The notes beneath the pieces were generated by a model. It did not search any database, was not told the DNA's origin, and saw nothing but the letters and a program-made list of their open reading frames with translations. Both the position numbers and the translations under genes were made by a program. From assembly GCA_002269645.1 (NCBI GenBank), contig NIVC01000811.1, positions 124,001 to 188,000 of the forward strand: a stretch of 64,000 nucleotides of DNA, written 5' to 3'. Positions 9,242 to 63,831 of this stretch are shown here, one piece after another; positions within the stretch are counted from its first letter, which is position 1, and each line of letters opens with the position of its first letter. The DNA is from Macrostomum lignano. Lineage: Eukaryota.

Positions 9242-9329
9242 TGCAATGGCATCTGTCCGGTGGTCCCTTTGTCCGCACTGGGTATCTGTGCTCAGTGCTT
9301 TCCCTCTTAATGGTTTCTTTACTCATTTT

Positions 9330-10049: not shown

Positions 10050-10620
10050 GACCAGATGAAAGAACCAAATGACCAGATGGAAGCATCGAATGACCTGATG
10101 GAAGAAACAAATGACCAGATGGAAGCATCAAATGACCAGTTGGAAAAGTCAAATGACCAGATATGAGAATCAAATGACCAGATATGAGAATCTGGTCAAA
10201 TGACCAGATGTGAGAATCAAATCACTAGATGTGAGAATCAAATGACCAGATGTGAGAATCAAATGACCAGATGTGAGAATCAAATGACCAGATGTGAGAA
10301 TCAAATGACCAGATATGAGAATCAAATGACCAGATATGAGAATCAAATGACCAGATGAGAGTTAAATGACTGGATGGTAGCATCAAACGACCAGATGGAA
10401 GAATCAAATGACCAGTTGGAAAAGTCAAATGACCAGATGGAAGAATCAAATAACCAGATATGAGAATCAAATGACCAGATGGAAGAATCAAATAACCAGA
10501 TATGAGAATCAAATGACCAGATATGAGAATCAAATGACCAGATATGAGAATCAAATGACCAGATATGAGAATCAAATGACCAGATATGAGAATCAAATGA
10601 CCAGATATGAGAATCAAATG
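10050..10620. repeat. 21-bp minisatellite, right block
   Basis: Same unit and orientation as 8680-9241. Confidence 0.93.
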
Positions 10621-11159
10621 ATTGAAGCATCAAGTGACTACGATGAAGTATTAAAAGAGAAAAACCATCGCTGTTAAATCGATGTATTCGAATTTTCGAG
10701 CACACAAAATGCCCATTTTTGAAGAAACAACAAATATTGGTCACAAAAATCAGACGCACAAATAATAAATTTATTTATTAACTGGCTGAAATCTACAGGT
10801 AACGGACACATTTATAAACGCACACATAGCTAGCATTGTGGAATAATATCATCAATAGTGTCTTGGAAACAAAAACACTCAAAACAAAAATCACAGGAAT
10901 ATATAATTTCTTCCATCTTACGAATGATTAAAAAAGTCACGATTATTACAGACATCTGTGTAGCGTTATAATCTTGTTAAGCACTGTAACCTTATCATAA
11001 GAACAAAAATACACAGCTGGTAGCATAGTGGACACTCAATAAAATGATTATCTCGATGGACGATAAGCTAAATAATTATCCATATTTTAATATGCAGGTC
11101 ATCAACTTTCTACAACGACTGTTGTAAAAATTATAAATCAAAAAGCGTTCGCTGCCATA

Positions 11160-11900
11160 TCTCACCGACACGTCTCACCGACACGTCTCACCGACACGTC
11201 TCACCGACACGTCTTACCGACACATCTCACCGACACATCTCACCGACACATCTCATGGACACATCTCACCGACACATCTCACCGACACAACTCACCGACA
11301 CATCTCACCGACACATCTCACCGACACAACTCACCGACACATCTCACCGACACATCTCACAGACTTATCTCACCGACACATCTCACCGACACATCTCACC
11401 GACACAACTCACCGACTTATCTCACCGACACATCACACAGACTTATCTCACCGACACATCTCACCGACATATCTCACCGACACAACTCACCGACTTATCT
11501 CACCGACACTTCTCACAGACTTATCTCACCGACACATCTCATCGACACATCTCACCGACACATCTCACCGACACGTCTCACCGACACATCTCACCGACAC
11601 ATCTCACCGACACATCTCACCGACTTATCTCATGGATACATCTCACCAACTTATCTCATCGACACATCTCACTGACACATCTCACCGACACATCTCCCCG
11701 ACACATCTCACCGGCACATCTCACAGACTTATCTCACCGACACATCTCACCGGCACATCTCACCGACTTATCTCACCGACAATCTCACCGACTTATCTCA
11801 TCGACACATCTCACCGACACATCTCACCGACACATCTCACCGACTTATCTCATCGACAAATCTCACCGACACATCTCATCGACACATCTCACCGACATAC
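11160..11900. repeat. 13-bp minisatellite (CATCTCACCGACA)
   Basis: Direct tandem units. Confidence 0.93.
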
Positions 11901-12246
11901 CTCATACTGACAGTTTTTAAGCGACGTGACTCATTTCGTCAAAACCAGACTATTCGTAATGGAAGATTGTTTACACTACATAAACGCAATTGCCGCAAAA
12001 ATATGTTTAAAAGCACTAAAAGCTAAAACGACTGCAGTGTCGCTCAGTCAAAATTGACTCGACATTCGGGCTAGGAACTAGGGGCCATCACAACAATAAA
12101 CGAAGTTTCTTCAAAAAAACTTGGACAAAAACGCACGTTATTACACATCAATGCTAAATAGTTCCACGCAAATATTAATATCAAATGAGATTTTCAGCCC
12201 CCCAGCGTACGGCACTCCCTCAGCACTCCCTCAGTTCCATTCACTG

Positions 12247-21647
<9,401 letters not shown>

Positions 21648-40400: not shown

Positions 40401-41658
40401 TGAGGGACAGAGATAAGGGAGTGAGGGACAGAGTTAAGGGAGTGAGGGACAGAGATAAAGGAGAGAGGAAGAGAGATAAGGGAGTGAGGGAGAGAGATAA
40501 GGGAGTAAGGGAGAGAGATAAGGGAGTGAGGGACAGAGATAAAGGAGAGAGGAAGAGAGATAAGGGATTGAAGGAGAGAGATAAGGGAGTGAGGAAGAGA
40601 GGTAAGTGAGCGAGGGAGTGATATCAGAGAAGATAGGAAAAGCTTATAGCTAGTATGAAATCAATAAATAAAGTCAGAAAAAAGTTCAACGCAGACAGTT
40701 GCAGCATTGCAAAACTTCTAGAAAATACCACGCAGGGTTCAGTTCGTATAGGCGTGAAAATTATCACTGCAACAGCTGCTAGAATCATGGCTTGGTGGGT
40801 GCGGGTTTGTTTACCTCTGCCAAACTTCCGAAGTCCTTCTTGATCGAAGCTACATCGCTGACGCAACCGGATTTTCTCAGTAGATTCCTTCATCGCGACC
40901 TGTTGCGCAACCGCTATTATTATTAACACCGCGCCTTGAACGTGACTTGTTGGGGACGCCTGTAGCGTCTGAGGTTGCTATGGTTACACCCTTATGGACA
41001 TGAACCAGATTCTCCATCTAAAGGGTTATAAAAAGGAAGCGAATTCTTGCCAAATGATGTTAAAAATTTATCTGAAAGTATAAAAAAAATGTTTGTGTCA
41101 TGAAGTATGATTATTACTCAGACATATGAGAGTGACAGTTCATGAGGGTGACAGCTCATGAAAATGACAGTTCATGAGAGTGACAGTTCATAAGAGTGTC
41201 AGTTCACAAGAGTGACAGTTCACGAGAATGACAGTTCATAAGAGTGACAGTTCATGAGAGCGACAGTTCACGAGAGTGACAGTTCAGGAGAGTGACGGCT
41301 CATAAGAGTGACAGTTCACGAGAGTGACAGTTCACGAGAGTGACAGTTCACGAGAGTGACAGTTCACGAGAGTGACAGTTCACGAGAGTGACAGTTCACG
41401 AGAGTGACAGTTCACGAGAGTGACATTTCACGAGAGTGACAGTTCACGAGAGTGACAGTTCACGAGAGTGACAGTTCACGAGAGTGACAGTTCACGAGAG
41501 TGACAGTTCATGAGAGTGACAGTTCACGAGAGTGACAGTTCACGAGAGTGATAGTTCATGAGAGTGAAATTTTATTAAATTCCCTGCAGGCCGAAGCTCT
41601 GGACCGAGTCATACAGCTGGCCTTGAAGACCGAACTGAATGCCAGCCAGACAGCCTGA
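26995..41658 (+). CDS. DNAI4: Dynein axonemal intermediate chain 4 (WDR78), WD40 protein; start exon not located
   Basis: Exons: 26995-27250, 27581-27955, 28555-28843, 29383-29484 (weaker), 30987-31093, 31173-31275, 31477-31640, 32019-32260, 32705-32995, 35272-35488, 36281-36378, 36743-36821, 39210-39287, 41590-41658 (TGA). Phases consistent. Signatures: SETDTIWLLD, GNDKYV, LFIIERAVVQN, GLVCCWSVKN, DALISRQASG, GTEDGNLHKCSCSYNEQYLESYFGH, DVFISCAADW, LLVGDAQG. Confidence 0.93.
27350..27471. promoter_or_regulatory. Cluster of three RFX X-box-like motifs in the DNAI4 5' intron
   Basis: GTGTCCTTGGCAAC (27350-27363), GCTTCCTTGGCAAC (27429-27442 and 27458-27471); they resemble the GTNNCC-N-RGYAAC X-box typical of ciliary genes. 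Confidence 0.35.
28157..28432. repeat. (GTTA)n microsatellite
   Basis: Direct observation. Confidence 0.95.
28985..29260. repeat. Degenerate G/T-rich repeat (GGTTTTATGGGG / GGTATTGTGGGG)
   Basis: Direct observation. Confidence 0.8.
30335..30860. repeat. Compound repeat: 26-bp unit (CAGCCCCTCGCTTAGAATCAGTCCAA) nested in a longer ~60-bp unit
   Basis: Direct observation. Confidence 0.85.
31730..31960. repeat. Degenerate tandem repeat (GATCCCACCGATTCCCAATGAGGATTTTTCTCCCATCC...)
   Basis: About 4 imperfect units. Confidence 0.75.
32270..32695. repeat. 27-bp minisatellite (ACCTCACTCCGCCAAGCATTAACACCC)
   Basis: Fills the DNAI4 intron 32261-32704. Confidence 0.92.
33005..35222. repeat. 15-bp minisatellite (TTCGGGACTAAAGGA), split by a solo LTR
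   Basis: Blocks 33005-33418 and 34601-35222. Confidence 0.93.
33419..34600. mobile_element. Solo LTR, 1182 bp
   Basis: Begins TGTGATAA and ends CACACTACA (TG...CA); flanked by a 4-bp direct repeat GGAC (33415-33418, 34601-34604); interrupts the 15-bp array; no coding motifs recognised. Confidence 0.75.
35560..36060. repeat. Degenerate GATCTGG / GATTGATGACATCATGG compound repeat
   Basis: Direct observation. Confidence 0.85.
37035..37420. repeat. GGGATCATTCTGATGGGAT-type tandem repeat
   Basis: Direct observation. Confidence 0.85.
37640..38100. repeat. 21-bp minisatellite (TTACATGATCCTTTTGGTCTG)
   Basis: Direct observation. Confidence 0.9.
39312..40600. repeat. 21-bp purine-rich minisatellite (AGAGATAAGGGAGTGAGGGAS), ~60 copies
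   Basis: Explains the RDKGVRE ORF; the real exon in that ORF is only 39210-39287. Confidence 0.95.
41125..41565. repeat. 16-bp minisatellite (TGACAGTTCACGAGAG)
   Basis: Ends ~25 nt before the last DNAI4 acceptor. Confidence 0.93.
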
Positions 41659-42896: not shown

Positions 42897-43195
42897 GCGT
42901 GACTCCCGCTGCTCAACTCTGTCTCGACGCCTCCACCGAAAGTCTCGTCGCTTTCGCGACCCTCGGTGCCGCTCCGTGCGTCCGACCGGCGATGTTCGAA
43001 GCGGTGAACCTCCTGCCAGCTCGGCCGGACACTCTGGCTCTCCTGTTGTCCGACGATGGCACTCGGCTCTGTTCCTGACGGCCGGCAACGGCTCGAGACT
43101 CGACGCGACTTCGCTGACATCGGCGGCACAGCTGACTGCGGCCAGCTTTCGGACTCGACTGTCCGGAGCAGACGGCGGTGTCAGCTTTGAGAGCA
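42897..43195 (+). pseudogene. Truncated, frameshifted third copy of the AbfB-like exon
   Basis: Highly similar to ~47322-47612; indel near 43057-43070; ends at SFES where the 30-bp array begins. Confidence 0.85.
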
Positions 43196-43274
43196 GAGGA
43201 GATCAGACACAATGGTAGAGTGGTCTTATAGATCAGACACAGTGTTTATAGTGGCCTTATAGATCAGACACAGT

Positions 43275-45238
43275 GTTCATAGACACACTCACGCTCCGTG
43301 GAAGTCCAGAAAGGCGGACCGCAAGGTGTGGAGTCCTCAGCCCGATCCTCTGGAACTTAGTCATGGACGAGCTGCTTTGCAGCCCGCATCCGGACCCTGT
43401 TCAGAAGGTCGGCTATGCGGACGATGTTACCGCCACTGTGGCTGGACCATCGCCCGCGGTCCTCAGGGACCTCCTTCAAGCCTTCATCCACCGTGCCGAG
43501 CGCTGGGCACATAGCTGCGGTCTCAGGTTCTCTGAGTCTAAAACCGTGGCTATCATGTTCACCAGCCGCCGAAACTGGAGGATCGAACCGCTCTCCCTCT
43601 ACGGCAAACCTGTTGCCATGAAGAAACAAACTAGATGTCTGGGCGTCACCCTCGACCACAGGTTGAGCTGGACCCCGCACGTCCAAACTAAAGCCCGCAA
43701 AGCTCTCGCGACTCTCGCGCAGATCCGCAGAGCTTTCGGTGCTACCTGGGGCCTCACCCCCGCCGCCTCTGGTGGATTTACACTGCCATTGTTAGACCGG
43801 CCATCTCCTTCGCCGGCTTCATTTGGAACAGTGCCCTAGAGGTGAAAGGGGTTCTTGAGGTTTTAAATAGGGTGCAAGGCCGCGCTTGTCGAGCTATCAT
43901 GAGCGCGGCTCCCTCAACGCCCTTCGATGGCATGAACTCCTTCTTGGACATTCCCCCCCTCGACCTCTTTGTTAGAGGGGAGGCTATGAAAACCACCCGT
44001 CGTCTGCTTGACGCGGGTGTCCAAATCCAGAAGCAGTTTGCCTTCAGAAAGCGGAACCTCCGGCCGCACGGCGACCTCAGCCTGCGAGACCTGGAAGCAG
44101 CGAGAGGCCTGCTGACCCTCTCGGACGGAATCCCGTCCACGCTCTGCCCCCCGCTCAAATTCAAAACCAGCATTCCACCACGTCATGAAGCAAGAGACAA
44201 CTGGAAACCCCATAAAATCCACTGCTTCACTGACGGGTCCCAAATCAACTCCGCCTCTGGATACGGCTACTGCATCGTGTCTGGAGGGAGAACTGTGGCG
44301 ACCTTCTCCCAACACACCGGCACCTGCTCCACCGTCTTCCAGAACGAAGTTCTCGCCATCAGCTCCTGCGCCATGGAACTGTACAATCAGCGCGTCTGGG
44401 GGAAGGAAATTACCCTCCACTCGGACAGTCAAGCGGCGATTCACGCCCTTGAGCGCACCACCACCTGCTCGCGTACAGTCCTCGACTGCATCGGGCAGCT
44501 CAACCGCTTAGGCGCCTCCAACAAGGTGTCCCTAAGGTGGATCCCCGGGCATTCGGGCCACCCCGGCAACGAGCTGGCCGATCGCCTGGCCAAGGCTGGC
44601 TCGACCGGTTCTTTTACTGGTCCCCTGCCCGTGGCCCCCACCCCCATCGCCGTTGTCACCACTCGGATCAACCAGTGGGTGGCTTCTAAGCACAGGGAGA
44701 GGTGGGCTAACGCCCCCGACTGCCGGCAATCCCGCGCGGCTGTCCCCTGTCCCTCCCCCGCCCTACGCAGGGCCCTGCTTGTACTCAACCGCAGGGACAT
44801 CAGGGCGGTTACCATGGCCCTCTCGGGTCATGGCTGCTTTGCCAGGCATCGTTACCTCCAGGAGAAAATCCGCAGTGAGGAATGCCCTTTCTGCCTCTCC
44901 GGTGTCGAGAATGCGGAGCACTTCATCTGTGAATGCCCCGCATTTACTCAGGACAGGCTCACCTACCTCGGCCCAAACCCGGACCTCTCCGACGTTTTCA
45001 GGCCCGAGAATCTCTGCCAGCTCGTCCGCTACCTAAGGGCTACCGGGCGAGCGACAATCCACCTCCTGGACTCTCCGGAGGGGACCGCGCTGCGGACGCC
45101 GGCGCCACCGGAACTCCCTGCGCGACACCGCAGCACTAGCTGCCCGTGGTCGCCAGGGGTTAGCGAAATGGGCGGCAACGCCTCCTCGCTGTTTCCGGAC
45201 GCACGGAGCCCCCTGCAGCTGAGTCAAGTAAGTCAAAG
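43275..45238 (+). mobile_element. 5'-truncated non-LTR retrotransposon (RT + RNase H + Cys/His motif; I/R1/Loa-like)
   Basis: GPQG/GVLSPILWN, GYADDV (YADD 43414-43425), LGVTLD..LSW, RNase [42 protein letters not shown], then [14 protein letters not shown]; two frameshifts (~43325, ~43760); AAGT-like 3' end; inserted in the 30-bp array. Confidence 0.9.
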
Positions 45239-45239
45239 A

Positions 45240-45822
45240 GGCCTTATAGATCAGACAAAATGGTAGAGTGGTCTTATAGATCAGACACAGTGTTTATAGT
45301 GGCCTTATAGATCCGAAACAGTGTTAGAGTGGTCTTATAGATCAGACACAATGGTAAAGTAGCCTTATAGATCAGACACAATGGTAGAGTGGTCTTATAG
45401 ATCAGACACAGTGTTTATAGTGGCCTTATAGATCCGAAACAGTGTTAGAGTGGTCTTATAGATCAGACACAATGGTAAAGTAGCCTTATAGATCAGACAC
45501 AATGGTAGAGAGGCCTTATAGATCAGACACAATGGTAGAGTGGTCTTATAGATCAGACACAGTGTTTATAATGGCCTTATAGATCCGAAACAGTGTTAGA
45601 GTGGTCGAACAATGCTAGAATGGCCTTATAGATCAGACACAATGGTAGAGAGGCCTTATAGATAAGACACAATGATGGAGAGGCCTTATAGATCAGACAC
45701 AATGGTAAAGTGGTCTTATAGATCAGACACAATGGTAGAGAGGCCTTATAGATCAGATACAATGGTGGAGAGGCCTTATAGATCAGACACAATGGTCAAG
45801 TGGCCTTATAGATCAGATACAG
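45240..45822. repeat. 30-bp minisatellite (GATCAGACACAATGGTAGAGTGGCCTTATA); also at 43200-43275
   Basis: Reverse complement of the array at 56722-58088. Confidence 0.93.
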
Positions 45823-46059
45823 CTAGCCGTTAAGATCTGAATAATTTAGGTGAACATTAACGGGGCAAGTGAAGGCTCATTCACATGTGGCTGGGCAAAT
45901 TGCTTCAAGCCAATCAGGCTCCAGGTAGAGACCTGTATATGCTGATGATCTGTGACTCCGCAGACAACTTGTCTGCTCGTTTCTTTCTCCATCTTCTTGG
46001 GTTCGAAACTGCTGCTCAAGATTGTCACTGCATTGCTTTGCAACACCGAGGACAAAACG

Positions 46060-48764
46060 ATGAGGCCTCTCGCCCTCTTGATGGCTCTTTCGGCTGCAAT
46101 TCAGCTTCCAGACTTTTGTTCAGGTGAGACTGTTGCCTGTCTTTTTGGGTTTATTGCAATCAACGGAACTGCGTATCGAAGTTACAAGTAGTCACCCAGA
46201 CCTAATCAGCACCTTACCACTCTGTAGCATAGACCCACTCCCTCAGGCATAAGTAATCACTCAGACCTAATCAGCACCTTGCCACTCTGTAGCATAAGAC
46301 CCACTCCCTCAGGCATAGGTAATCACTCAGACCTAATCAGCACCTTGCCACTCTGTGGCATAGACCCACTCCCTCAGGCATAGGTAATCACTCAGACCTA
46401 ATCAGCACCTTGCCACTCTGTAGCATAGACCCACTCCCTCAGGCATAGGTAATCACTCAGACCTAATCAGCACCTTACCACTCTGTAGCATAGACCTCAG
46501 ATACACTAAGTTAAGACTACCTAAGCTATCAAGCAGCTTTACCACTCTGACACGAACCCCAGTCTAACACTAATTGGTAGTCACACAGCCTCTTCTTTAC
46601 TAAAGAAGAAACAAGGGCTATAATGGCCTTGAATTCGTTATATTATTCTCCACTGCTCATTACTCAACAACCTTACGTCAGAAGGCAACCAGTCTGCCAA
46701 CAATGAACTGCATGCGCTTGGAATTTAGCGTAGTTGCCCAGAAGGAAAGATATTTCTATTGAATTGATCAGCCATCTCTGTGTACCGTGCAATCCATCAG
46801 AAAAATTGCTAGTCATGCTGGCTGCATCAAATGAATAGGGGGGGGGGGGCTGCTCTGCTCGAAACGACAATCGGCCTCTAGTTTTTAATTCAAAGAAAAT
46901 CGCTGCGATTGTTGTTGCTGCTTTGCTACGTGCCTATGACCCTGCCGAGCCCCCCGCGGAGGAACCGGGCCCCCATCTTCCTTGCTCGGTTCCAGGCGAA
47001 TTTTTTTGTATGCCAGTGCCTAAAAAAGTTCGCCAGATTTTTGTATTTTGGTTGCATTTGTAGAAATTGAGCTAGCTAACTGCAGTGCATACGACAGCCC
47101 TGACTTTCCTATCACCATAAGTCATACATTCCCTCTGTGCAGATGGGGGTGCATCGCACGCCAAGCGAAAGGCCCATTCACACACTTTTACAAGCACCAG
47201 TCTATCGTAAAATTTTCACAAATAGATTAGCATAATAATTTACTCTGACTGCAAGCCCATCACCTTGGAATGCAGGTCTACCGCTGTGTCCCAATGAGCA
47301 GCTCAGTCTCGCTGCTCAGCTGACTCCCGCTGCTCAACTCTGTCTCGACGCCTCCACCGAAAGCCTCGTCGCTTCCGCGACCCTCGGTGCCGCTCCGTGC
47401 GTCCGACCGGCGATGTTCGAAGCGGTGAACCTCCTGCCAGCTCGGCCGGACACTCTGGCTCTCCTGTTGTCCGACGGCGCTCCGACTCTGTTCCTGACGG
47501 CCGGCAACGGCTCGAGACTCGACGCGACTCCGCTCACATCGGCGGCACAGCTGACTGCGGCCAGCTTTCGGACTCGACTGTCCGGAGCAGACGGCGGTGT
47601 CAGCTTTGAGAGCGTCCTGCGGCCGGGGATTTTCGTCGGACTTTTGTCGCCGAACTCCACTGAGGCAGGCGGGTCGGCTGTGGGACTGACAGCGGCCGAG
47701 CTGAGCTTCACCGTGAACTGCAGCACTGGTGAGTCGGCTGAGGACCTCCTCTGTGGAGCTGTGAGCTGTCATTGTTGTTTAACTTTCTGAAAGCTCTGCT
47801 TTTTCAGCCGCTTCGTCCCTGCGGTCTCGCGGCCAGCCGGCCCGCTTCTCCACCATCAACTACGCCGGGCTGTACGCGTCCTCCCTGGTGGACGGAAACC
47901 ACAATGGAAGATGGAGCTCCGGCTCGTGCGCTGAGACCTCCGCTTCCGACCCGACGCCCTGGTTCATGATCGACCTGCTGCGCGACTTCCTCATCGACCG
48001 AGTGGACGTGTACAACCGTCAGGACTGCTGCTACACTCGGTTCCGACAGGTGACTCTCGGTGTGGGATCGGATCCGCAGTCGTGGGTCACCTGGTCGCCG
48101 AGCCAGTTCGCACAGGTGAATTACTACGCTGGTCCGGCGATTCTGAGTCCTCAGGTAGTACCGTTTTCGGACATCCTGCTGGTTGGACGGTTCATCGTGC
48201 TGCAGAAGAACGTCACGGGTCTGGCTTCCAATCAGCTGATCATGAACCTGTGCGAGGTCGAGGTCTTCGGCTGGGACGTCTGTGAGTGCTTTGCGTATGG
48301 ATTTTTTCGCATAGATTAGAGCTTGCTTAGCAATCATTTGTCGCCACTTGCAGTTCCACTCGTGTCGGAGGGCATGCCGACCGCCGCCAGTTCTGCAGTC
48401 AGCACTGAGTTGTCAGTCGATGCCAAACTCAGCAACTGCTTCAACTCGCCGATCGCAACATCCAATGACTCCACCGCGTGGCTTCTCGTGGACTTTCTGC
48501 GTCCGGTGCAGTTGCACGAAGCCTCAGTCATTCTGGCTGTTCAGGCAGCGTCCAATGCTGAAACCAGTTTGCAGTTTTACGGAGTGCAAGACGCATCGTC
48601 CAACGGCACTGCTCTGGCAAACGTGTCATTTAGAGGCAACAAAGTTGGCCAAGTTCAACAGCGAGTGCATCTCAAGGACCGGACTGGTCAGATGGTTCGG
48701 ATGACCATTGACGGGACGTCGCAGCTGTCCATCTGCGAGATTCAGGTGTTCGCAGCTTCAGTTG
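46060..48764 (+). CDS. Secreted lectin-like protein copy A: signal peptide - AbfB-like beta-trefoil - F-type lectin (FTP/F5-8C) - divergent FTP; 3' part appears disrupted
   Basis: Exons 46060-46123 (MRPLALLMALSAAIQLPDFCS), 47276-47728 (AASFRTRLSGADGGVSFESVLRPGIF), 47808-48281 (LVDG..SC..PWFMIDL..NRQDCCYTR..GRFIVL..LCEVEVFG), 48354-48764 (WLLVDF..ICEIQVF); all phase 1, GT-AG. Confidence 0.78.
46199..46495. repeat. ~64-bp tandem repeat in lectin intron 1, ~4.5 copies (vs ~10 copies at 55730-56358)
   Basis: Unit GACCTAATCAGCACCTTGCCACTCTGTAGCATAGACCCACTCCCTCAGGCATAGGTAATCACTCA. Confidence 0.9.
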
Positions 48765-48989
48765 GTGAGGATTAGTTTTTAGTGACTCTCTATCTTCACT
48801 ATGATCTTCCCGACTCAGTTCGGTAACCAGAGCCAATTCGCTTGATGTAACGCCATCGAGGGATTGTACTGGTAAATGCTTCCAGTTGGTCATCTTTCTC
48901 CAGTGTCTAATAAACTAACAATGTGTTTGTATTCTCAAAGGCTTCAGACTGCGCTTCTGTCCTCTTTCTGCCCAACAAAAGGCTCGCTT

Positions 48990-49734: not shown

Positions 49735-50859
49735 AGCCGAAAAAAGAAAAGACAGCTCTGTTAATCCTCGATCTCGACTATCTCTACTTCTCGTCAGCTC
49801 AAGCCTATCATCAGCTTATTCATTTATAGTCTATGGCCCAACAGCTTTTTTATTTATAGTCTATGGCCCAACCACCGCCCTCCTTACGCAGTCGCACGCA
49901 CGCAGACTCTTACCCTGAAATAATGACCGCTTCCGGCACGCTGAAATAATGGCCAGGCTGTGTCTTATAGACAATGACGTTGCGTAGTAGGTAAGGGGCT
50001 GAAATAATGGCCTTAGACACTCGTGCGCGGGCAATCTACCATTGCCACATATGTAGCTCGTAGCAATGCATGATTGTCACACGCTTCGTGAGTGGCTTGA
50101 TCAATAGGACAATAATATTGTCTATATGATTTCTTCCATAGACAATGCTCGAAGCCACTCGTGGCAATTCGTACATTGCCTATATCAGAAATCATTTAGA
50201 CAACTAACCATTGCTAGGGTTTTCTATGCTCGTATAGATAACAGATTTTGCAAAGAATTGCTGTTTTACACAGTGCTAATGGGGTTATGCCATAGAAAAA
50301 TGCACTAAAGTGATGGGAACATGGATGAAGGATTCCTTCCTTCATCCATGGATGGGAACAGCTGAAATTTCTTCGATGTTCGACTTCGTTGACTTTTAAC
50401 GCTTTGAACAAAGCCCTAATATTAACAAGACAAATAAAGAGGAAATAGCCAGAGCTGAGGCTACGGAGCAGACCCACGTTGGCTGCCAATTCATTTGTTT
50501 CTTTGTTGGAAAAAGACACAACAGTTTTGTATTCATTACTTTATTGCTGCCTAGTGCCTGATCACAATGCATGGAAAAGGCCAGCTCATTGGAGTGCAAC
50601 AAGTTTTCATTTGGTGCCTGCGTGATTTGTAAGGAAGGCTGCTTGCGTGCGGGAGATAATACTATTCATATATGAAAGTGTTTTGACGGTCATCAGCAAC
50701 CTTAGTTAACAAAATTCACAAACAGCACACCTGTCGCCTGTGGATTCCCGGGCCAGTATATACGCTCGTAATTCTACTTTGAACAGTACTTTTCCCTACG
50801 CGACTTTTCTGGTTGATGGGAAATATGAGTATGACAGCAGTGGCTCTATTGCAAAGCCG

Positions 50860-51330
50860 TGAGACGTCCTGCTGAGCGACTTCCTCGTTGACCGAGTTTA
50901 CGTGTGGATCCGATTATCAGGGGTGGCTGGAAAAGTTGCTGAGCCAGTTCACGCTGGTGAACTGCTCTGCTGGTCCGGCGGCTGCTGCTGGAAGTCCGAA
51001 AACTTTTACACACATCAGGCGTGTTGGACGTTTCGTCATGCTGCAGAAGAATGCCACTGGTCTCGCTTCTGAGCAGCTCGTCATGAGCCTGAACGAACTT
51101 GAAGTGTTCGGTTGAGACGTCTGTAAGTTCGAGTTTATTGTTACCTTGAGCCTGGAGATGATGCTTCCTGTGCAGCTGCACGAAGTGTTTCTCACCGCGA
51201 CCGTTCTGGACGTCATCAAAACGGAGATCACCTTCGATTTACCCATCATTGGAGACGAATGGACTGACGAAATCAAAATCACGAAATTCTACAGAACCGG
51301 AGATCATGACCGAGTGCGCGCGGGTACCTG
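50860..51330 (+). pseudogene. Older decayed FTP-domain exon remnants
   Basis: LLSDFLVDRV...VGRFVMLQKNATGLASEQLVMSLNELEVFG* (TGG to TGA relative to the intact copies) and PVQLHEV; internal deletions. Confidence 0.8.
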
Positions 51331-51439
51331 AGTGACTGGACGGGCGGGTCGTTGCAGCTGACCATTTCCGGCATGTTTTTACACCAAAAAGAGCAGCAAC
51401 TTTATCAAGAAACGTTTGCTTCAACTTGATCATCTGCTT

Positions 51440-51700
51440 CACTCCCAGCTCCGATTCTGTGCGGCGGCGGCGGCGAGGCCTTCGAGCTCTGGGAGGCCAA
51501 GCCGAACACATCCAGCGGCACCCGCCGACTTCTGCACTGCACCGATCCGCTGCCGCAGCCGGCAGCTCAGTCCCGGTTGCCATGGCTACGCCGAACGCGT
51601 TAGCAACCGACTGGCTGCCCCTGAGGCTGCTGCAGCGGCCGGCTCTGAGCCCGGCTGGCGCGGCCGCCTTCGGCAGGCGGTCGGCGGAGTGTACAGCGGC
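51440..51700 (+). pseudogene. Frameshifted, truncated copy of the second AbfB exon
   Basis: Matches ~53104-52875 in reverse; 5-nt net indel after LLH; cut off by a 14-bp CAGTCAATTTGTGA array (51700-51870). Confidence 0.8.
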
Positions 51701-52570
51701 AGTCAATTTGTATCAGTCACTTTCTGATAATCAGTTTGTGATATTCAGTTTGTGACAGTCAATTTGTGACAGTCAATTTGTGACAGTCAATTTGTGACAG
51801 TCAATTTGTGACAGTCAATTTGTGGCAGTCAATTTGTGACAGTCAATTTGTGACAGTCAGTTTGTGACAGTGACCCGTCAGACAAAGAACAGGGCCAGTC
51901 AACCCAGACAGATTGAAATTTCTATTCAGGGTAACGGGCTTCAATAACTCAGACTGGATAAACACACAGAGAGCGCAAAGGCAGTCTCTGGACACTGAAC
52001 TCTATTGCTCAAATTTAAGATGACTGTATTCTTTAAATTTGTAATAATTTTTGTAATAGCAGAAGGTAAAAACATCATCTTATAAAGGCTTGAAATGTCA
52101 ATTTTCTCTGTCTCGCCAATGCGTACTTATATTTCATGTACATGTATTCTGAGTGGCAATTGAAGGCTTTAACACGTCACTCCATTTCTTATTGACAGTC
52201 GCGTAATGGAAGCAATTAAAGTCTGAAATGTCAACGAGATCAATAAAAAGTTGACATTACTTTGTTTGAACTGTCATGCTGTCAGACTTGCCATTTTAAA
52301 TTTCTTTTTTTCAATGCTAAAGGCTTGGCCTTAGAAAGATAGCTGCTTTAGCTTAAATTCTTAAGCGTCGTATATAAACAGTCGTCGATATTTTGAGTCA
52401 GTATATTTATAAAGAAAAATTTAACAGAAACATATTCACACAAAAGCGCATCAATGTACTTCAATATTTAATAAAAAATATATATTTTTAATAAGCATAC
52501 CTACCTTTGCCTTACCTTTGTGAGACAGCGGGTTGAAATAATGATAAAGTCACCCAGAGGGAATGCTCAC

Positions 52571-55500
52571 CGGAGTCGCAGGCGGCCTCGAAGCTGCTCA
52601 CCAGCCCGACACCGTCAGCCTCCGCCAGTCGCAGCGTCGCCACGCCGACTGCCGACTCCGCTGCCAGAAGGCCTGCCGCGCCATGCCGCAGCTCGAGTCT
52701 CCCGCAGCAGGACGTCGCGTGCGGCTGCGCCAGGCTGAAGGTCGCTCGCTGACGCTCCGCCTCGGCGTCGGCACCGCCGCCGCTCGTCGGGCGAAACAGC
52801 GCCGCGGTGTCGTTGGCTCCGGTCGGCAGGATGCTCAGGAACCAGCCGGGAGCTGCCGCAGCTTCGAAGGACGCCGCCGACCGCCGGCGGAAGGCGGCCG
52901 CGCCAGCCGGGCTCAGAGCCGGTCGCTGCAGCAGCCTCAGGGGCAGCCAGTCGGTTGCTAACGCGTTCGGCGTAGCCATGGCAACCGGGACTGAGCTGCC
53001 GGTCGCGGCTGTGGACCAGTGCAGAAGTCGGCGGGTACCGCTGGATGTGTTCGGCTTGGCCTCCCAGAGCTCGAAGGCCTCGCCGCCGCCGCACAGAGTG
53101 GGAGCTGGGAGTGGAACGGGATTTTGAATTGCGGTTACCAGCTGTGCTAGAATAAAGGTTTCACATTGAGAGAAGTCAAGTTAGCTGATATTCATACTCA
53201 TAATTGTATTTTAAAGGCGTCAAGTAGCTGTCTGCGGTAAATCCGGCTGACTCTTGCGCTACGCGACCCCCAGACTTATTTATTGCGCGCCCGCCTTCAT
53301 TTGGGGCTTGTGTGCACGGATATTGGCCAGGTGGGGTGCGATTCACAGCCAAGAGGGCCAACAGCCGTTCTGTAGTTGTTATTATTATCGGACTTTAAGC
53401 GTCACTAAAAACTAATCCTCACCAACTGAAGCTGCGAACACCTGAATCTCGCAGATGGACAGCTGCGACGTCCCGTCAATGGTCATCCGAACCATCTGAC
53501 CAGTCCGGTCCTTGAGATGCACTCGCTGTTGAACTTGGCCAACTTTGTTGCCTCTAAATGACACGTTTGCCAGAGCAGTGCCGTTGGACGATGCGTCTTG
53601 CACTCCGTAAAACTGCAAACTGGTTTCAGCATTGGACGCTGCCTGAACAGCCAGAATGACTGAGGCTTCGTGCAACTGCACCGGACGCAGAAAGTCCACG
53701 AGAAGCCACGCGGTGGAGTCATTGGATGTTGCGATCGGCGAGTTGAAGCAGTTGCTGAGTTTGGCATCGACTGACAACTCAGTGCTGACTGCAGAACTGG
53801 CGGCGGTCGGCATGCCCTCCGACACGAGTGGAACTGCAAGTGGCGACAAATGATTGCTAAGCAAGCTCTAATCTATGCGAAAAAATCCATACGCAAAGCA
53901 CTCACAGACGTCCCAGCCGAAGACCTCGACCTCGCACAGGTTCATGATCAGCTGATTGGAAGCCAGACCCGTGACGTTCTTCTGCAGCACGATGAACCGT
54001 CCAACGAGCAGGATGTCCGAAAACGGTACTACCTGAGGACTCAGACTCGCCGGACCAGCGTAGTAATTCACCTGTGCGAACTGGCTCGGCGACCAGGTGA
54101 CCCACGACTGCGGATCCGATCCCACACCGAGAGTCACCTGTCGGAACCGAGTGTAGCAGCAGTCCTGACGGTTGTACACGTCCACTCGGTCGATGAGGAA
54201 GTCGCGCAGCAGGTCGATCATGAACCAGGGCGTCGGGTCGGAAGCGGAGGTCTCAGCGCACGAGCCGGAGCTCCATCTTCCATTGTGGTTTCCGTCCACC
54301 AGGGAGGACGCGTACAGCCCGGCGTAGTTGATGGTGGAGAAGCGGGCCGGCTGGCCGCGAGACCGCAGGGACGAAGCGGCTGAAAAAGCAGAGCTTTCAG
54401 AAAGTTAAACAACAATGACAGCTCACAGCTCCACAGAGGAGGTCCTCAGCCGACTCACCAGTGCTGCAGTTCACGGTGAAGCTCAGCTCGGCCGCTGTCA
54501 GTCCCACAGCCGACCCGCCTGCCTCAGTGGAGTTCGGCGACAAAAGTCCGACGAAAATCCCCGGCCGCAGGACGCTCTCAAAGCTGACACCGCCGTCTGC
54601 TCCGGACAGTCGAGTCCGAAAGCTGGCCGCAGTCAGCTGTGCCGCCGATGTGAGCGGAGTCGCGTCGAGTCTCGAGCCGTTGCCGGCCGTCAGGAACAGA
54701 GTCGGAGCGCCGTCGGACAACAGGAGAGCCAGAGTGTCCGGCTGAGCTGGCAGGAGGTTCACCGCTTCGAACATCGCCGGTCGGACGCACGGAGCGGCAC
54801 CGAGGGTCGCGGAAGCGACGAGGCTTTCGGTGGAGGCGTCGAGACAGAGTTGAGCAGCTGGAGTCAGCTGAGCAGCGAGACTGAGCTGCTCATTGGGACA
54901 CAGCGGTAGACCTGCATTCCAAGTTGGTGGGCTTGCAGTCAGAGTAAATTATTATGCTAATCTATTTGTGAAAATTTTACGATAGACTGGTGCTTGTAAA
55001 AGTGTGTGAATGGGCCTTTCGCTTGGCGTGCGATGCACCCCCATCTGCACAGAGTGAATTTATGATTTATGGTGATAGGAAAGTCAGGGCTGTCGTATGC
55101 ACTGCAGTTAGCTAGCTCAATTTCTACAAATGCAACCAAAATACAAAAATCTGGCGAACTTTTTTAGGCACTGGCATACAAAAAAATTCGCCTGGAACCG
55201 AGCAAGGAAGATGGGGGCCCGGTTCCTCCGCGGGGGGCTCGGCAGGGTCACAGGCACGTAGCAAAGCAGCAACAACAATCGCAGCGATTTTCTTTGAATT
55301 AAAAACTAGAGGCCGATTGTCGTTTCGAGCAGAGCAGCCCCCCCCCCCCCTATTCATTTGATGCAGCCAGCATGACTAGCAATTTTTCTGATGGATTGCA
55401 CGGTACACAGAGATGGCTGATCAATTCAATAGAAATATCTTCCCTTCTGGGAAACTACTCTAAATTCCAAGCGCATGCAGTTCATTGTTAGCAGACTGGT

Positions 55501-56493
55501 TGCCTTCTGACGTAAGGTTGTTGAGTAATGAGCAGTGGAGAATAATATAACGAATTCAAGGCCATTATAGCCCTTGTTTCTTCTTTAGTAAAGAAGAGGC
55601 TGTGTGACTACCAATTAGTGTTAGACTGGGGTTCGTGTCAGAGTGGTAAAGCTGCTTGATAGCTTAGGTAGTCTTGACTGTGTCTAGATCTATATGTGAT
55701 CTATAGATCTAGATCTATATCTATATCTGAGGTCTATGCTACAGAGTGGCAAGGTGCTGATTAGGTCTGAGTGATTACCTATGCCTGAGGGAGTAGGTCT
55801 ATGTCACAGAGTGGTAAGGTGCTGATTAGGTCTGAGTGATTACCTATGCCTGAGGGAGTAGGTCTATGTCACAGAGTGGTAAGGTGCTGATTAGGTCTGA
55901 GTGATTACCTATGCCTGAGGGAGTGGGTCTATGCTACAGAGTGGCAAGGTGCTGATTAGGTCTGAGTGATTACCTATGCCTGAGGGAGTGGGTCTTATGC
56001 TACAGAGTGGTAAGGTGCTGATTAGGTCTGAGTGATTACCTATGCCTGAGGGAGTTGGTCTATGCTACAGAGTGGTAAGGTGCTGATTAGGTCTGAGTGA
56101 TTACTTATGCCTGAGGGAGTAGGTCTATGTCACAGAGTGGTAAGGTGCTGATTAGGTCTGAGTGATTACCTATGCCTGAGGGAGTGGGTCTATGCTACAG
56201 AGTGGCAAGGTGCTGATTAGGTCTGAGTGATTACCTATGCCTGAGGGAGTGGGTCTTATGCTACAGAGTGGTAAGGTGCTGATTAGGTCTGAGTGATTAC
56301 CTATGCCTGAGGGAGTTGGTCTATGCTACAGAGTGGTAAGGTGCTGATTAGGTCTGGGTGACTACTTGTAACTTCGATACGCAGTTCCGTTGATTGCAAT
56401 AAACCCAAAAAGACAGGCAACAGTCTCACCTGAACAAAAGTCTGGAAGCTGAATTGCAGCCGAAAGAGCCATCAAGAGGGCGAGAGGCCTCAT
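52571..56493 (-). CDS. Secreted lectin-like protein copy B: signal peptide - AbfB - FTP - FTP - AbfB (3' end unresolved)
   Basis: Exons (-): 56493-56430, 54911-54459, 54379-53906, 53833-53423, 53104-52571 (534 nt, open; PALSP..AASFEAAAAPGWFL..RQRATF); all phase 1, GT-AG. Read-through at the last donor would end at the stop at 52512. Confidence 0.8.
55730..56358. repeat. ~64-bp tandem repeat, ~10 copies
   Basis: Reverse complement of 46199-46495. Confidence 0.9.
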
Positions 56494-56721
56494 CGTTTTG
56501 TCCTCGGTGTTGCAAAGCAATGCAGTGACAATCTTGAGCAGCAGTTTGGAACCCAAGAAGATGGAGAAAGAAATGAGCAGACAAGTTGTCTGCGAAGTCA
56601 CAGATCATCAGCATATACAGGTCTCTACCTGGAGCCTGATTGGCTTGAAGCAATTTGCCCAGCCACATGTGAATGAGCCTTCACTTGCCCCGTTAATGTT
56701 CACCTAAATGATTCAGATCTT

Positions 56722-58088
56722 AACGGCTAGCTGTATCTGATCTATAAGGCCTCTCTACCATTGTGTCTGATCTATAAGACCACTTTACCATTGTGTCTGA
56801 TCTATAAGGCCTCTCCATCATTGTGTCTTATCTATAAGGCCTCTCTACCATTGTGTCTGATCTATAAGGCCATTCTAGCATTGTTCGACCACTCTAACAC
56901 TGTTTCGGATCTATAAGGCCATTATAAACACTGTGTCTGATCTATAAGACCACTCTACCATTGTGTCTGATCTATAAGGCCTCTCTACCATTGTGTCTGA
57001 TCTATAAGGCTACTTTACCATTGTGTCTGATCTATAAGACCACTCTAACACTGTTTCGGATCTATAAGGCCACTATAAACACTGTGTCTGATCTATAAGA
57101 CCACTCTACCATTGTGTCTGATCTATAAGGCCATTCTAGCATTGTTCGACCACTCTAACACTGTTTCGGATCTATAAGGCCATTATAAACACTGTGTCTG
57201 ATCTATAAGACCACTCTACCATTGTGTCTGATCTATAAGGCCTCTCTACCATTGTGTCTGATCTATAAGGCTACTTTACCATCGTGTCTGATCTATAAGA
57301 CCACTCTAACACTGTGTCTGATCTATAAGGCCATTCTACCATTGTGTCTGATCTATAAGGCCTCTCTACCACTGTGTCTGATGTATAAGGCCATTCTACC
57401 ATTGTGTCTGATCTGTAAGGCCTCTTTACCACTGTGTCTGATGTATAAGGCCATTCTATCACTGTGTCTGATCTATAAGGCCATTTTACCATTGTGTCTG
57501 ATCAATAAGGCCTCTTCATCGTTGTGTCTGATCTATAAGGCCTCTCCATCATTGTGTCTGATCTATAAGGCCTCTACCATTGTGTCTGATCTATAAGGCC
57601 GCTCTACCATTGATCTGATGTATAAGGCCATTCTATCATTGTGTTTGATCTATAAGGCCATTCTATCATTGTGTCTGATCTATAAGGCCTCTCTACCACT
57701 GTGTCTGATGTATAAGGCCATTCTATCATTGTGTCTGATCTATAAGGCCTCTCTACCACTGTGTCTGATGTATAAGGCCATTCTATCCCTGTGTCTGATC
57801 TATAAGGCCATTCTATCATTGTGTCTGATCTATAAGTCAACTCTACCATTGTGTATGATCTATAAGGCAACTCTACCATTGTGTCTGATCTATAAGGCCA
57901 CTCTACCATTGTGTCTGATGTATAAGGCCATTCTATCACTGTGTCTGATCTATAAGGCCATTCTATCATTGTGTCTGATCTATAAGGCCTCTCTATCACT
58001 GTGTCTGATGTATAAGGCCATTCTATCACTGTGTCTGATCTATAAGGCCATTCTATCACTGTGTCTGATCTATAAGGCCATTCTACCA
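56722..58088. repeat. 30-bp minisatellite, reverse orientation, uninterrupted
   Basis: Explains the [10 protein letters not shown] ORFs. Confidence 0.93.
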
Positions 58089-58369
58089 TTCTGTCTTATG
58101 TTAATAGCTGCAATTTTCATATAGACTAGTTCTGCTTGCATTGCACTTTTATTACTGTCGTGCCATATTTTCTAATCAGCCACTACCCGAGACAGATATG
58201 CTCTCTATCCTTCCATCCATGGACTACTTAGCGGAGCATCTGGACTGGCCAAAAAACAAGAAAATTTGGCGAAAAAATGCTTCAAATATTTTCGTAACGA
58301 GTTTCTCCTCTCGTTATTAGAAAAATTCAAACTAAAAATCTCAGTCCAGATTTCCCATAGTAGTAGTCC

Positions 58370-63831
<5,462 letters not shown>

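What the first reader, a model, noticed from the sequence alone, without database searches (positions are those of the whole stretch)
52571..56493. Secreted modular AbfB + F-type lectin protein built from one-domain, phase-1 exons
Seen: after a signal-peptide exon, four exons (453, 474, 411, 534 nt, each phase 1-1 and divisible by 3) each encode one domain: AbfB-like, FTP, divergent FTP, AbfB-like. Established: AbfB/CBM42 is an arabinose-binding beta-trefoil known mainly from microbial arabinofuranosidases and, in animals, from a few proteins such as otogelin; FTP domains are fucose-binding F-type lectins; symmetric phase-1 exons are the classic signature of exon shuffling. Inference: a multi-specificity glycan-binding secreted protein (mucus, adhesion, microbe recognition or feeding). 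I do not recognise this architecture as a named family.
Basis: partly seen in the sequence, partly recalled or inferred. Interest (0 to 1): 0.75.

Follow-up and report, generated by a model that had tools for sequence, protein, structure and literature searches.

The report
Secreted mosaic F-type lectin gene
This is a five-exon animal-type gene for a secreted sugar-binding (F-type lectin) protein whose two outer domains resemble nothing in the databases; the "AbfB" label for them is not confirmed, and the gene lies in a recently duplicated, rearranging cluster.

Summary
The gene model is real. On the minus strand, a signal-peptide exon is followed by four GT-AG exons, all in phase 1-1 and each encoding one module. 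The second module is a definite F-type lectin domain (PDB FBP32 E=1.7e-20, eel agglutinin 1.6e-10). It keeps the Ca2+ motif, the RxDx4R motif and the conserved cysteines, but the fucose-contacting His is Glu. The third module is a degenerate copy of that fold without the sugar-binding triad.

The two outer modules are not demonstrably AbfB/CBM42. Pfam gives no hit at E<=10. hhalign gives 3.5% and 0.3% probability. An exhaustive phmmer search of the first outer module against 1.84 billion proteins found no true relative. Single-sequence AlphaFold2 failed (pLDDT about 30). Both share a two-part motif, F-R-x-R…SFE[SA]xxxPGxF[LV]. It resembles beta-trefoil hairpins in AbfB and, more closely, in IL-1-family cytokines (best E=0.06, not significant). 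"Beta-trefoil-like, family unassigned" is as far as the evidence goes.

I read it as a new mosaic variant of the F-type lectin family, of modest interest.

The parts
56430..56493 (-). Exon 1: ATG plus a signal-peptide-like sequence (MRPLALLMALSAAIQLPDFCS), 64 nt, ending in phase 1
   Evidence: First ATG of the ORF, A at -3, GTGAGA donor. An identical copy lies at 46060-46123 on the plus strand. The signal peptide is judged by eye; no predictor was available.
55730..56365 (.). 65-bp minisatellite inside intron 1 (9.8 copies; 4.7 copies in paralog A at 46188-46496)
   Evidence: Tandem Repeats Finder
54459..54911 (-). Exon 2 (453 nt, phase 1-1): orphan Cys-bounded module N (151 aa, 4 Cys) carrying the motif ASFRTR...SFESVLRPGIFV
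   Evidence: Splice sites and frame. Codon model. 2/453 substitutions against copy A, compared with 2.5% in non-coding sequence. No Pfam or PDB hit. No true relative among 1.84e9 proteins.
53906..54379 (-). Exon 3 (474 nt, phase 1-1): F-type lectin domain with LVDGN, SCAE (His replaced by Glu), NRQDCCYTR and LCEVEVFG
   Evidence: PDB 3cqo E=1.7e-20, 1k12 E=1.6e-10, 2j1r E=2.7e-7. Pfam PF22633 E=7e-13 and PF00754 E=4e-10.
53423..53833 (-). Exon 4 (411 nt, phase 1-1): degenerate F-type/discoidin-like domain. It keeps AWLLVDFL and ICEIQVF but has no Ca motif and no basic triad.
52571..53104 (-). Exon 5 core (534 nt, phase 1-1): orphan Cys-bounded module C (178 aa, 4 Cys) carrying the motif AAFRRR..SFEAAAAPGWFL
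   Evidence: Splice sites. Codon model. Homology to copy C begins 9 nt upstream of this acceptor. Weak IL-1-family matches, E=0.06.
53105..53146 (-). Optional 42-nt 5' extension of exon 5 (alternative in-frame acceptor ttctag|CA at 53146)
   Evidence: Its codon score is poor and it is not conserved in copy C.
52512..52570 (-). Read-through tail (EHSLWVTLSLFQPAVSQR, then TAA at 52514-52512) if the GTGAGC donor at 52570 is not used
   Evidence: It scores like non-coding sequence, and GC content falls sharply here.
52467..52492 (-). Two ATTAAA hexamers (52487-52492 and 52467-52472) 20-45 nt past the TAA, in an 18%-GC stretch; candidate poly(A) signals
   Evidence: Read from the sequence; inference only
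45853..48789 (+). Paralog A: inverted copy of the promoter region and exons 1-4 (e1 46060-46123, e2 47276-47728, e3 47808-48281, e4 48354-48764)
   Evidence: blastn 97-98% identity. Exons differ at 4/1402 sites, non-coding sequence at 40/1573, Fisher p=6e-8.
50764..51722 (+). Decayed copy C: an FTLD-like pseudo-exon (43-47% aa identity to e3, with an in-frame stop and a frameshift) and an exon-5-like piece (51442-51722, 92% nt identity, frameshifted, cut off by a 14-bp minisatellite)
42899..43194 (+). Fragment D: part of exon 2 (94-98% aa identity in two frames) next to a non-LTR retrotransposon

Best explanation
Shown: window 52512-56493 (minus strand) holds an intact five-exon ORF whose exon 3 is a genuine F-type lectin domain. 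[quoted passage not shown]

Inferred mechanism:
- The exon-1 signal peptide sends the protein to the secretory pathway. It has 9 N-x-S/T sequons, and each module has an even number of Cys.
- The exon-3 FTLD keeps the Ca2+-binding h2DGx motif, the R-x-D-x4-R half of the sugar motif and the family's cysteines, but has Glu where the fucose-contacting His normally sits. It probably binds a glycan with altered specificity, or more weakly, than classical fucolectins.
- The exon-4 domain is a degenerate FTLD that most likely acts as a structural partner, as the non-identical second domains of tandem FTLs do.
- The two outer modules (exons 2 and 5) are mutually related, Cys-bounded, lineage-restricted modules. 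They are probably beta-rich and possibly beta-trefoils. They would add further binding or oligomerisation surfaces, so the protein could cross-link glycans as an agglutinin, opsonin or adhesion lectin.
- The one-module-per-exon, phase-1-1 layout, together with the duplications, inversion, retrotransposon and minisatellites around it, points to assembly and turnover by exon shuffling and birth-and-death evolution.
For: Gene model:
- Splice sites, phases and open frames.
- GC3 pattern and GC islands.
- An independent codon model picks the proposed frame.
- Exons are about 9-fold more conserved than introns and flanks between copies A and B (4/1402 against 40/1573, p=6e-8). Exon 2 alone gives p=0.004.

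FTLD identity:
- PDB FBP32 E=1.7e-20, AAA E=1.6e-10, S. pneumoniae FRP E=2.7e-7, with LVDGN, NRQDCCYTR and LCEVEVFG aligned.
- Pfam F5_F8_type_C_2 E=7e-13.
- The motif definitions HX24RXDX4(R/K) and h2DGx, and the statement that domain shuffling and mosaic architectures are typical of FTLs, come from PMC5712786.

Exon 4 as a degenerate FTLD.

Outer modules related to each other:
- Both have a P-x-L-C start and an SF-x-x-x-C end.
- The motif SFE[SA]xxxPGx[FY][LIVM] occurs only in e2 (in both copy A and copy B) and in e5 of copy B in the six-frame translation of the whole window. It occurs 0 times in 200 shuffles.

Trefoil hint:
- All nine PDB hits at E<=10 to the e2/e5 profile are IL-1-family trefoils matching that motif.
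- The AbfB HMM scores e2 above 99.97% of shuffles.

Secreted nature: sequons and Cys parity.
Against: - No transcript evidence is available.
- The 3' end is unresolved. Exon 5 looks like an internal phase-1-1 exon, yet no downstream minus-strand exon is visible. The complete ORF exists only by reading through the donor into 19 codons that score like non-coding sequence.
- The His-to-Glu change means fucose binding cannot be assumed.
- The outer modules have no significant homolog and no usable structure model (pLDDT 32.5 and 30.4), so their role is inference.
- Only 2 synonymous and 2 non-synonymous differences separate copies A and B. That is too few for dN/dS, and gene conversion could also keep the exons alike.
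- The source organism is unknown. None of its proteins was found in the protein collections.
Confidence: 0.62

Rival explanations
1. One reading: the outer modules are true AbfB/CBM42 homologs. The protein would then be an AbfB-FTP-FTP-AbfB lectin that binds arabinofuranose-type as well as fucose-type glycans.
For: - BLASTP of both e2 and e5 against the real 1WD3 CBM42 domain lands on the same motif, SFESVDTPGSYI (single-comparison E=0.023 and 0.17).
- hhalign aligns e2 residues 94-120 to ASW..GL...SFESVDTPGSYI (P=0.012).
- Unfiltered hmmsearch with a fungal AbfB HMM gives e2 4.9 bits, empirical P=0.0003, and e5 P=0.036. Controls e3 and e4 give P=0.08 and 0.75.
- By eye, e5 can be laid on the three-repeat AbfB template (AFELW..RLLH / SFEAA..PGWFL..ATFSL / GRLELRH..SSFEAA).
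- e5 shows an internal periodicity of 44 residues (P about 0.05), against 47 in AbfB.
Against: - Pfam PF05270 gives no hit at E<=10.
- hhalign probabilities are 3.5% and 0.3%.
- 1WD3 and the other CBM42 structures are absent from PDB hits at E<=10.
- e2 shows no significant threefold periodicity (P=0.34).
- From memory of the CBM42 structures, and not tested here: the His (in 'RH') and Asp (in 'DATF') pairs that bind arabinofuranose are mostly not conserved.
Confidence: 0.22
2. The outer modules are beta-trefoils of another lineage: IL-1/FGF-like, or a new lineage-specific trefoil lectin family. They only converge with AbfB on the generic trefoil hairpin motif.
For: - e5 alone, and the e2/e5 profile, pick almost only IL-1-family trefoils out of 177,635 PDB sequences (IL-36Ra, IL-1Ra, IL-36alpha, IL-1beta), all on F[RY]RR..SFE[SA]..PGWFL. 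For e5 alone this is 5 of 6 hits; for the e2/e5 profile it is all nine. The best E-values are 0.06 and 0.075.
- The same two-part motif is present in e2.
Against: - No hit is significant database-wide.
- The match covers about 40 residues only. Global Z against IL-36Ra is 1.5-1.7, at control level.
- Pfam IL1 was not reported.
- The nine hits are one homologous family, so they count as one observation.
Confidence: 0.3
3. The locus is a decaying remnant. Copy B would be a 3'-truncated product of the inverted duplication that is not expressed or not functional, and its intact ORF simply reflects its youth.
For: - Exon 5 ends at a consensus donor with no visible downstream exon.
- Neighbouring copies are clearly broken. 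Copy C has a stop and frameshifts. Copy A would run into the frameshifted e5' and stop after about 50 codons. Fragment D sits beside a retrotransposon.
- Copies A and B differ by only about 2.5% even in introns, so the duplication is recent.
Against: - The exons are about 9-fold better conserved than the non-coding sequence between A and B (p=6e-8). Neutral decay would not give this.
- All five exons are open with intact splice sites.
- A stop codon and two ATTAAA signals follow immediately if the last donor is skipped.
Confidence: 0.2
4. A and B are not paralogs. They would be two haplotypes of a highly polymorphic species that the assembler joined in inverted orientation.
For: About 2.5% non-coding divergence with minisatellite copy-number differences is typical of allelic divergence in many marine invertebrates (general knowledge). 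The arrangement is tail-to-tail.
Against: - The arms are not a perfect fold-back.
- About 3.6 kb of unique sequence separates them. It contains an older decayed copy (C), and homology ends at different points within intron 4.
- Fragment D and the retrotransposon show that real rearrangements occurred here.
Confidence: 0.15

Closest known systems
F-type lectins (fucolectins): MsaFBP32 (PDB 3CQO), Anguilla anguilla agglutinin (1K12), and mosaic FTLs such as Xenopus PXN-FBPL, Drosophila furrowed/CG9095 and sea urchin SpCRL
   Same: - Exon 3 aligns over the whole FTLD, with the Ca2+ motif, the RxDx4R motif, the CC pair and the C-terminal CEVEVFG.
- A non-identical second domain follows in tandem.
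- The protein looks secreted.
- Combination with unrelated modules and evolution by duplication and shuffling are typical of the family. Retroposons and repeats next to FTLD exons have been described in oyster bindin genes (PMC5712786).
   Different: - The His of the basic triad is Glu.
- The second FTLD has lost the Ca motif and the triad.
- The partner modules are not CTLD, pentraxin, CCP or FA58C, but two orphan modules with no detectable homolog.
AbfB / CBM42 arabinofuranose-binding beta-trefoil (A. kawachii AbfB, 1WD3; the AbfB domain of otogelin, PMC4948705)
   Same: A short two-strand motif, A[ST][FW]..-(GL)-..SFE[SA]xxxPGx[YF][ILV]. Module size is similar (about 150-180 aa). Both would have an extracellular carbohydrate-binding setting.
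   Different: No significant sequence or profile match. In e2 the motif sits one repeat out of register. The fold was not verified.
IL-1 family beta-trefoil cytokines (IL-36Ra 1MD6/13BS, IL-1Ra, IL-1beta)
   Same: This is the best local match in the PDB: FRRRS..SFEAAAAPGWFLSILP against [26 protein letters not shown].
   Different: The match is not significant database-wide (E=0.06), covers only about 40 residues, shows no global similarity, and occurs in a lectin rather than a cytokine.

Membership tests
F-type lectin family (FTLD) | Significant sequence match to solved FTLDs or to the F5/8-type-C superfamily profile across the domain | tested here: met
   e3: 3cqo E=1.7e-20, 1k12 E=1.6e-10, 2j1r E=2.7e-7. 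PF22633 49.4 bits against a cut-off of 27.8.
F-type lectin family (FTLD) | Fucose-binding motif H-X24(26)-R-X-D-X4-(R/K) (PMC5712786) | tested here: not met
   In e3 the His position is Glu (GSCAETS against GSCTHSS in AAA). R-Q-D-C-C-Y-T-R matches RXDX4R. e4 lacks the whole motif. The fold membership stands, but canonical fucose recognition cannot be assumed.
F-type lectin family (FTLD) | Ca2+-binding motif h2DGx | tested here: met
   LVDGN in e3 aligns to AIDGN in AAA and FBP32. It is absent from e4.
F-type lectin family (FTLD) | Conserved cysteines (AAA C50-C146 and C82-C83) | tested here: met
   GSC, DCC and LCEVEVF align in e3. e4 keeps only the outer pair (SNC...ICEIQVF). The disulfide bonds themselves cannot be tested here.
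F-type lectin family (FTLD) | Binds L-fucose or fucosylated glycans | not testable with these tools
   Needs recombinant protein and a glycan array.
AbfB / CBM42 (PF05270) | Match to the family profile at or near the curated threshold | tested here: not met
   No PF05270 hit for e2 or e5 at E<=10. hhalign against a 32-sequence AbfB alignment gives probabilities of 3.5% and 0.3%. Unfiltered hmmsearch gives 4.9 and 0.3 bits.
AbfB / CBM42 (PF05270) | Beta-trefoil fold with three pseudo-repeats | tested here: inconclusive
   AF2 single-sequence models have pLDDT 32.5 and 30.4, so no fold search was possible. Autocorrelation: e2 P=0.34, e5 offset 44 with P about 0.05, AbfB control offset 47 with P=0.003.
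AbfB / CBM42 (PF05270) | Conserved arabinofuranose-binding residues in subdomains beta and gamma | not tested
   No reliable alignment exists to map them. By eye, the His after PGxY[IL]R and the Asp of DATF are mostly replaced.
IL-1 family (beta-trefoil cytokines) | Significant match to family members or to the family profile | tested here: not met
Exon-shuffled extracellular module (symmetric phase 1-1 exon = one domain) | Each domain is encoded by one exon flanked by phase-1 introns | tested here: met
   e2 is 453 nt, e3 474 nt, e4 411 nt and e5 534 nt (or 576 nt). All are phase 1-1, and the domain limits coincide with exon limits.

The most novel reading that the evidence does not exclude
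Exons 2 and 5 would encode a previously unrecognised, lineage-restricted family of Cys-bounded beta-trefoil modules, distantly akin to CBM42 and/or the IL-1/FGF cytokine fold. Exon shuffling would have fused them to F-type lectin domains. The result would be a hetero-multivalent recognition protein that is being duplicated, inverted and pruned in a fast-evolving cluster, as expected for an immune or gamete-recognition lectin.
Probability: 0.3. Interest if true: 0.5.

Novelty: new variant of a known kind. Interest (0 to 1): 0.33.

Why it matters
F-type lectins are a model for how recognition proteins diversify by domain duplication and shuffling. This locus shows that process in progress. It has symmetric phase-1 exons with one module each, a young inverted duplicate under exon-specific constraint, older decayed copies, a retrotransposon, and minisatellites at the breakpoints. 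It also supplies two orphan modules with no detectable homolog that may extend the beta-trefoil lectin repertoire in animals. The FTLD with Glu in place of the fucose-contacting His is a natural variant useful for studying specificity. None of this changes current understanding of the family. Its value is as a catalogued new architecture and as a candidate for structural and glycan-array work.

Tried and rejected
1. Whole spliced protein against the 5.8-billion-protein word-indexed search: no hit. Exon 3 alone: 37 candidates, none scored. The tool is too insensitive for this divergence and the source proteome is not in it.
I used the single job on exon 2. Its only hit was P0001, a 1677-aa FN3-repeat protein whose score is the sum of 13 weak repeats. 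I rejected it as spurious.
3. AlphaFold2 on exon 2 and exon 5 without an alignment gave pLDDT 32.5 and 30.4, which is unusable. I chose not to fold exon 2 inside an AbfB alignment, because the borrowed alignment would impose the trefoil and make the test circular.
4. AbfB tests by BLASTP, hhalign, unfiltered hmmsearch with shuffles, and global or local alignment with shuffles: only motif-level signal.
5. Internal threefold repeat test: positive for the AbfB control, not significant for e2, marginal for e5.
6. Exact-protein look-ups of the GPCR ORF and two ORFs from the locus, to identify the organism: nothing on record.
7. Rfam and tRNA scans of the window: nothing.
8. Metagenome scan with exon 3: one 30%-identical FTLD-like stretch on an unrelated AT-rich contig (L001). 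Not informative.
9. Literature search for 'F-type lectin' together with 'AbfB': no paper holds both terms.
10. Search for a further minus-strand exon downstream of exon 5: the sequence is AT-rich until the opposite-strand copy C, and no candidate was found.
Full report
**What is in the sequence**

The finding lies on the minus strand. Translating 52400-56600 in three frames and then locating splice signals gives this model:

| Exon | Coordinates | Length | Notes |
|---|---|---|---|
| e1 | 56493-56430 | 64 nt | first in-frame ATG, MRPLALLMALSAAIQLPDFCS, donor GTGAGA |
| e2 | 54911-54459 | 453 nt | phase 1-1 |
| e3 | 54379-53906 | 474 nt | phase 1-1 |
| e4 | 53833-53423 | 411 nt | phase 1-1 |
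| e5 | 53104-52571 | 534 nt | phase 1-1 |

- Every donor is GTGAG and every acceptor is AG after a pyrimidine-rich stretch.
- An in-frame alternative acceptor at 53146 would add 14 codons.
- The exons are GC-rich islands (55-69% GC) in 43-48% GC introns, with GC3 > GC1 > GC2 in the proposed frame.
- A codon-usage model trained only on an unrelated single-exon GPCR ORF in the window (7017-8348) ranks the proposed frame first of six for e2 and e5. Their scores are as good as those of e3.
- The 42-nt 5' extension and the 57-nt stretch after the donor at 52570 score like non-coding sequence. This favours the 534-nt exon.

**Evidence of constraint**

The gene (copy B) has a near-identical inverted copy (A) on the plus strand at 45853-48789, covering the upstream region and exons 1-4.

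- In a MAFFT alignment, the exons differ at 4 of 1402 sites and the introns and flanks at 40 of 1573 (Fisher p=6e-8).
- Exon 2 alone differs at 2 of 453 sites (p=0.004).
- So the orphan exon 2 is constrained like the recognisable exons.
- Two of the four exon changes are non-synonymous (Q to R in e2, S to I in e3). That is too few for dN/dS.

**Domain identities**

Exon 3 is an F-type lectin domain.
- phmmer against the PDB gives striped-bass FBP32 (3CQO) E=1.7e-20, eel agglutinin (1K12) E=1.6e-10 and S. pneumoniae fucolectin-related protein E=2.7e-7.
- Pfam gives F5_F8_type_C_2 E=7e-13 and F5_F8_type_C E=4e-10.
- The printed alignments show the Ca2+ motif (LVDGN), R-Q-D-C-C-Y-T-R (= RXDX4R), the CC pair and the C-terminal LCEVEVFG.
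- The His that starts the fucose motif HX24RXDX4(R/K), as defined in PMC5712786, is Glu here (GSCAETS against GSCTHSS).

Exon 4 is a degenerate copy of the same fold.
- Pfam E is about 0.008, below the family threshold.
- BLASTP to e3 hits the PW..DLL and CE.EVF segments.
- It has neither the Ca motif nor the basic triad.

**The AbfB claim**

Exons 2 and 5 give no Pfam hit at E<=10. Exon 2 gives no PDB hit at E<=10.

The one exhaustive phmmer job, run on exon 2 against 1.84 billion representative proteins, returned a single hit. It is an FN3-repeat protein whose score is the sum of 13 weak repeats, and I regard it as spurious.

I recovered the true CBM42 domain of 1WD3 from the PDB and built a 32-sequence fungal AbfB alignment. 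The tests against these gave:
- BLASTP of e2 and e5 against 1WD3 lands only on SFESVDTPGSYI (single-comparison E=0.023 and 0.17).
- hhalign gives probabilities of 3.5% (26 columns) and 0.3%.
- Unfiltered hmmsearch gives 4.9 bits for e2 (better than 99.97% of 3000 shuffles) and 0.3 bits for e5 (P=0.036). Controls e3 and e4 give P=0.08 and 0.75.
- The threefold internal repeat is detectable in AbfB (offset 47, P=0.003). It is not significant in e2 (P=0.34) and marginal in e5 (offset 44, P about 0.05).
- AlphaFold2 without an alignment failed for both modules (pLDDT 32.5 and 30.4), so no fold comparison was possible.

AbfB membership is therefore not shown.

**What the outer modules do share**

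- Both start P-x-L-C and end S-F-x-x-x-C-(S/D)-x at the exon boundary. Each has four Cys.
- Both carry the two-part motif A-[SA]-F-R-x-R…S-F-E-[SA]-x3-P-G-x-F-[VL].
- In the six-frame translation of the whole window, the second half of this motif occurs only in these exons (e2 in copies A and B, e5 in copy B). It occurs 0 times in 200 shuffles.
- A profile of e2 plus e5, and e5 alone, retrieve almost only IL-1-family beta-trefoils from the PDB (5 of 6 hits for e5 alone, all nine for the profile): IL-36Ra, IL-1Ra, IL-36alpha and IL-1beta. All match on [22 protein letters not shown], with best E=0.06-0.075.

AbfB and IL-1 are different trefoil families that both use this hairpin motif. The most I can say is that the modules are probably beta-trefoil-like and related to each other, with the family unassigned. 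Statistically the IL-1-type match is stronger than the AbfB one, and neither is significant.

**The 3' end**

Exon 5 ends at a consensus donor (CCG|gtgagc, 52571/52570), where GC content drops from about 73% to below 40%. No further minus-strand exon is visible before the sequence runs into the opposite-strand copy C.

If the donor is skipped, 19 more codons lead to TAA (52514-52512). Two ATTAAA hexamers follow within 45 nt, in an 18%-GC stretch. Read-through gives a 664-aa protein, or 678 aa with the upstream acceptor. Only RNA data can decide between these.

**Locus context (not mentioned in the finding)**

- Copy A has intact exons 1-4, but its homology to B stops 25 nt into intron 4.
- Downstream on the plus strand lies an older, decayed copy C. 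It has an FTLD-like pseudo-exon at 50764-51121 (43-47% aa identity to e3, with an in-frame stop and a frameshift). It also has an exon-5-like piece at 51442-51722 (92% nt identity, frameshifted, ending in a 14-bp minisatellite).
- Spliced to that piece, copy A would terminate after about 50 codons.
- A fragment of exon 2 (42899-43194) abuts a non-LTR retrotransposon, with RVT_1 at 43273-43836 and RNase H within 43842-45266.
- A 65-bp minisatellite in intron 1 has 9.8 copies in B and 4.7 in A. A 30-bp minisatellite lies upstream of both copies.
- This resembles what the FTL review describes for oyster bindin genes, where retroposons and repeats flank FTLD exons.

**Interpretation**

The best-supported reading is a secreted mosaic member of the F-type lectin family, assembled from phase-1-1 modules.

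- It has one probably sugar-binding FTLD of altered specificity (His to Glu) and one degenerate FTLD.
- It has two orphan, probably beta-rich and possibly trefoil modules that would add binding or oligomerisation surfaces.
- The 9 N-glycosylation sequons and the even Cys count per module fit an extracellular protein.
- Mosaic FTLs and domain shuffling are established features of the family (PMC5712786), and otogelin shows that AbfB domains do occur in animal extracellular proteins (PMC4948705).
- No paper in the searched library mentions F-type lectin and AbfB together.
- The source organism could not be identified. An Srw-type GPCR, an Ost-alpha exon and a kinase exon in the window indicate a metazoan, most likely an invertebrate.

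**Verdict**

The exon structure and the FTP domains hold; the AbfB label does not.
- In novelty it is a new variant of a known kind.
- Interest is modest (0.33).

Noticed in passing
window 45853-48789 (+) versus 53398-56700 (-): An inverted, tail-to-tail duplication of the lectin gene's upstream region and exons 1-4. Identity is about 97% overall, 99.7% in exons and 97.5% in non-coding sequence.
   Followed up: yes
window 50764-51722 (+): An older decayed copy. It has an FTLD-like pseudo-exon with an in-frame stop and a frameshift, possible exon-4-like remnants (about 51116-51330), and a frameshifted exon-5-like piece cut off by a 14-bp minisatellite (51700-51871).
   Followed up: partly
window 42899-45266 (+): A fragment of exon 2 directly next to a non-LTR retrotransposon remnant (RVT_1 ORF 43273-43836, RNase H ORF 43842-45266). 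The element is embedded in the 30-bp minisatellite that also lies upstream of both gene copies (45240-45821 and 56732-58096).
   Followed up: partly
window 59074-60473 and 62778-63630: Two long, nearly perfect arrays of the same 14-bp satellite in opposite orientation (CCTAGATCCCAGAT, 100 copies; TGGGATCTAGGATC, 61 copies). They bracket a roughly 2.3-kb segment that holds a protein-kinase exon (61628-61927) and other tandem repeats.
   Followed up: no
window 7017-8348 (-): An intronless 443-aa ORF for a rhodopsin-class GPCR of the Srw/FMRFamide-receptor-like type (PF10324 E=1e-14). The exact protein is not in the public gene-call collection.
   Followed up: partly
window 12985-13737 (-): An exon encoding the C-terminal half of an Ost-alpha/TMEM184-type transporter (PF03619 E=1e-38). 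In the raw ORF it is fused to an (SVSQ)n microsatellite.
   Followed up: no
window 1-42000, many places: Mini- and microsatellites are unusually dense and produce long spurious ORFs on both strands. Examples are 401-3600, 5544-6194, 8609-11920, 15120-16775 and 39134-40618.
   Followed up: no
L001 3019-3234 (metagenome contig Ga0055584_100045676): The only metagenome match to exon 3 is a 30%-identical FTLD-like stretch on an unrelated AT-rich 4.3-kb contig, outside any ORF of 100 aa or more.
   Followed up: no
window 52871-52906 (-) and 54550-54585 (-): The motif SFE[SA]xxxPGxF[LV], preceded by [AS]FRxR, is nearly identical to the conserved IL-1-family segment (FYRR…[12 protein letters not shown]). 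The match is local only and not significant database-wide.
   Followed up: partly
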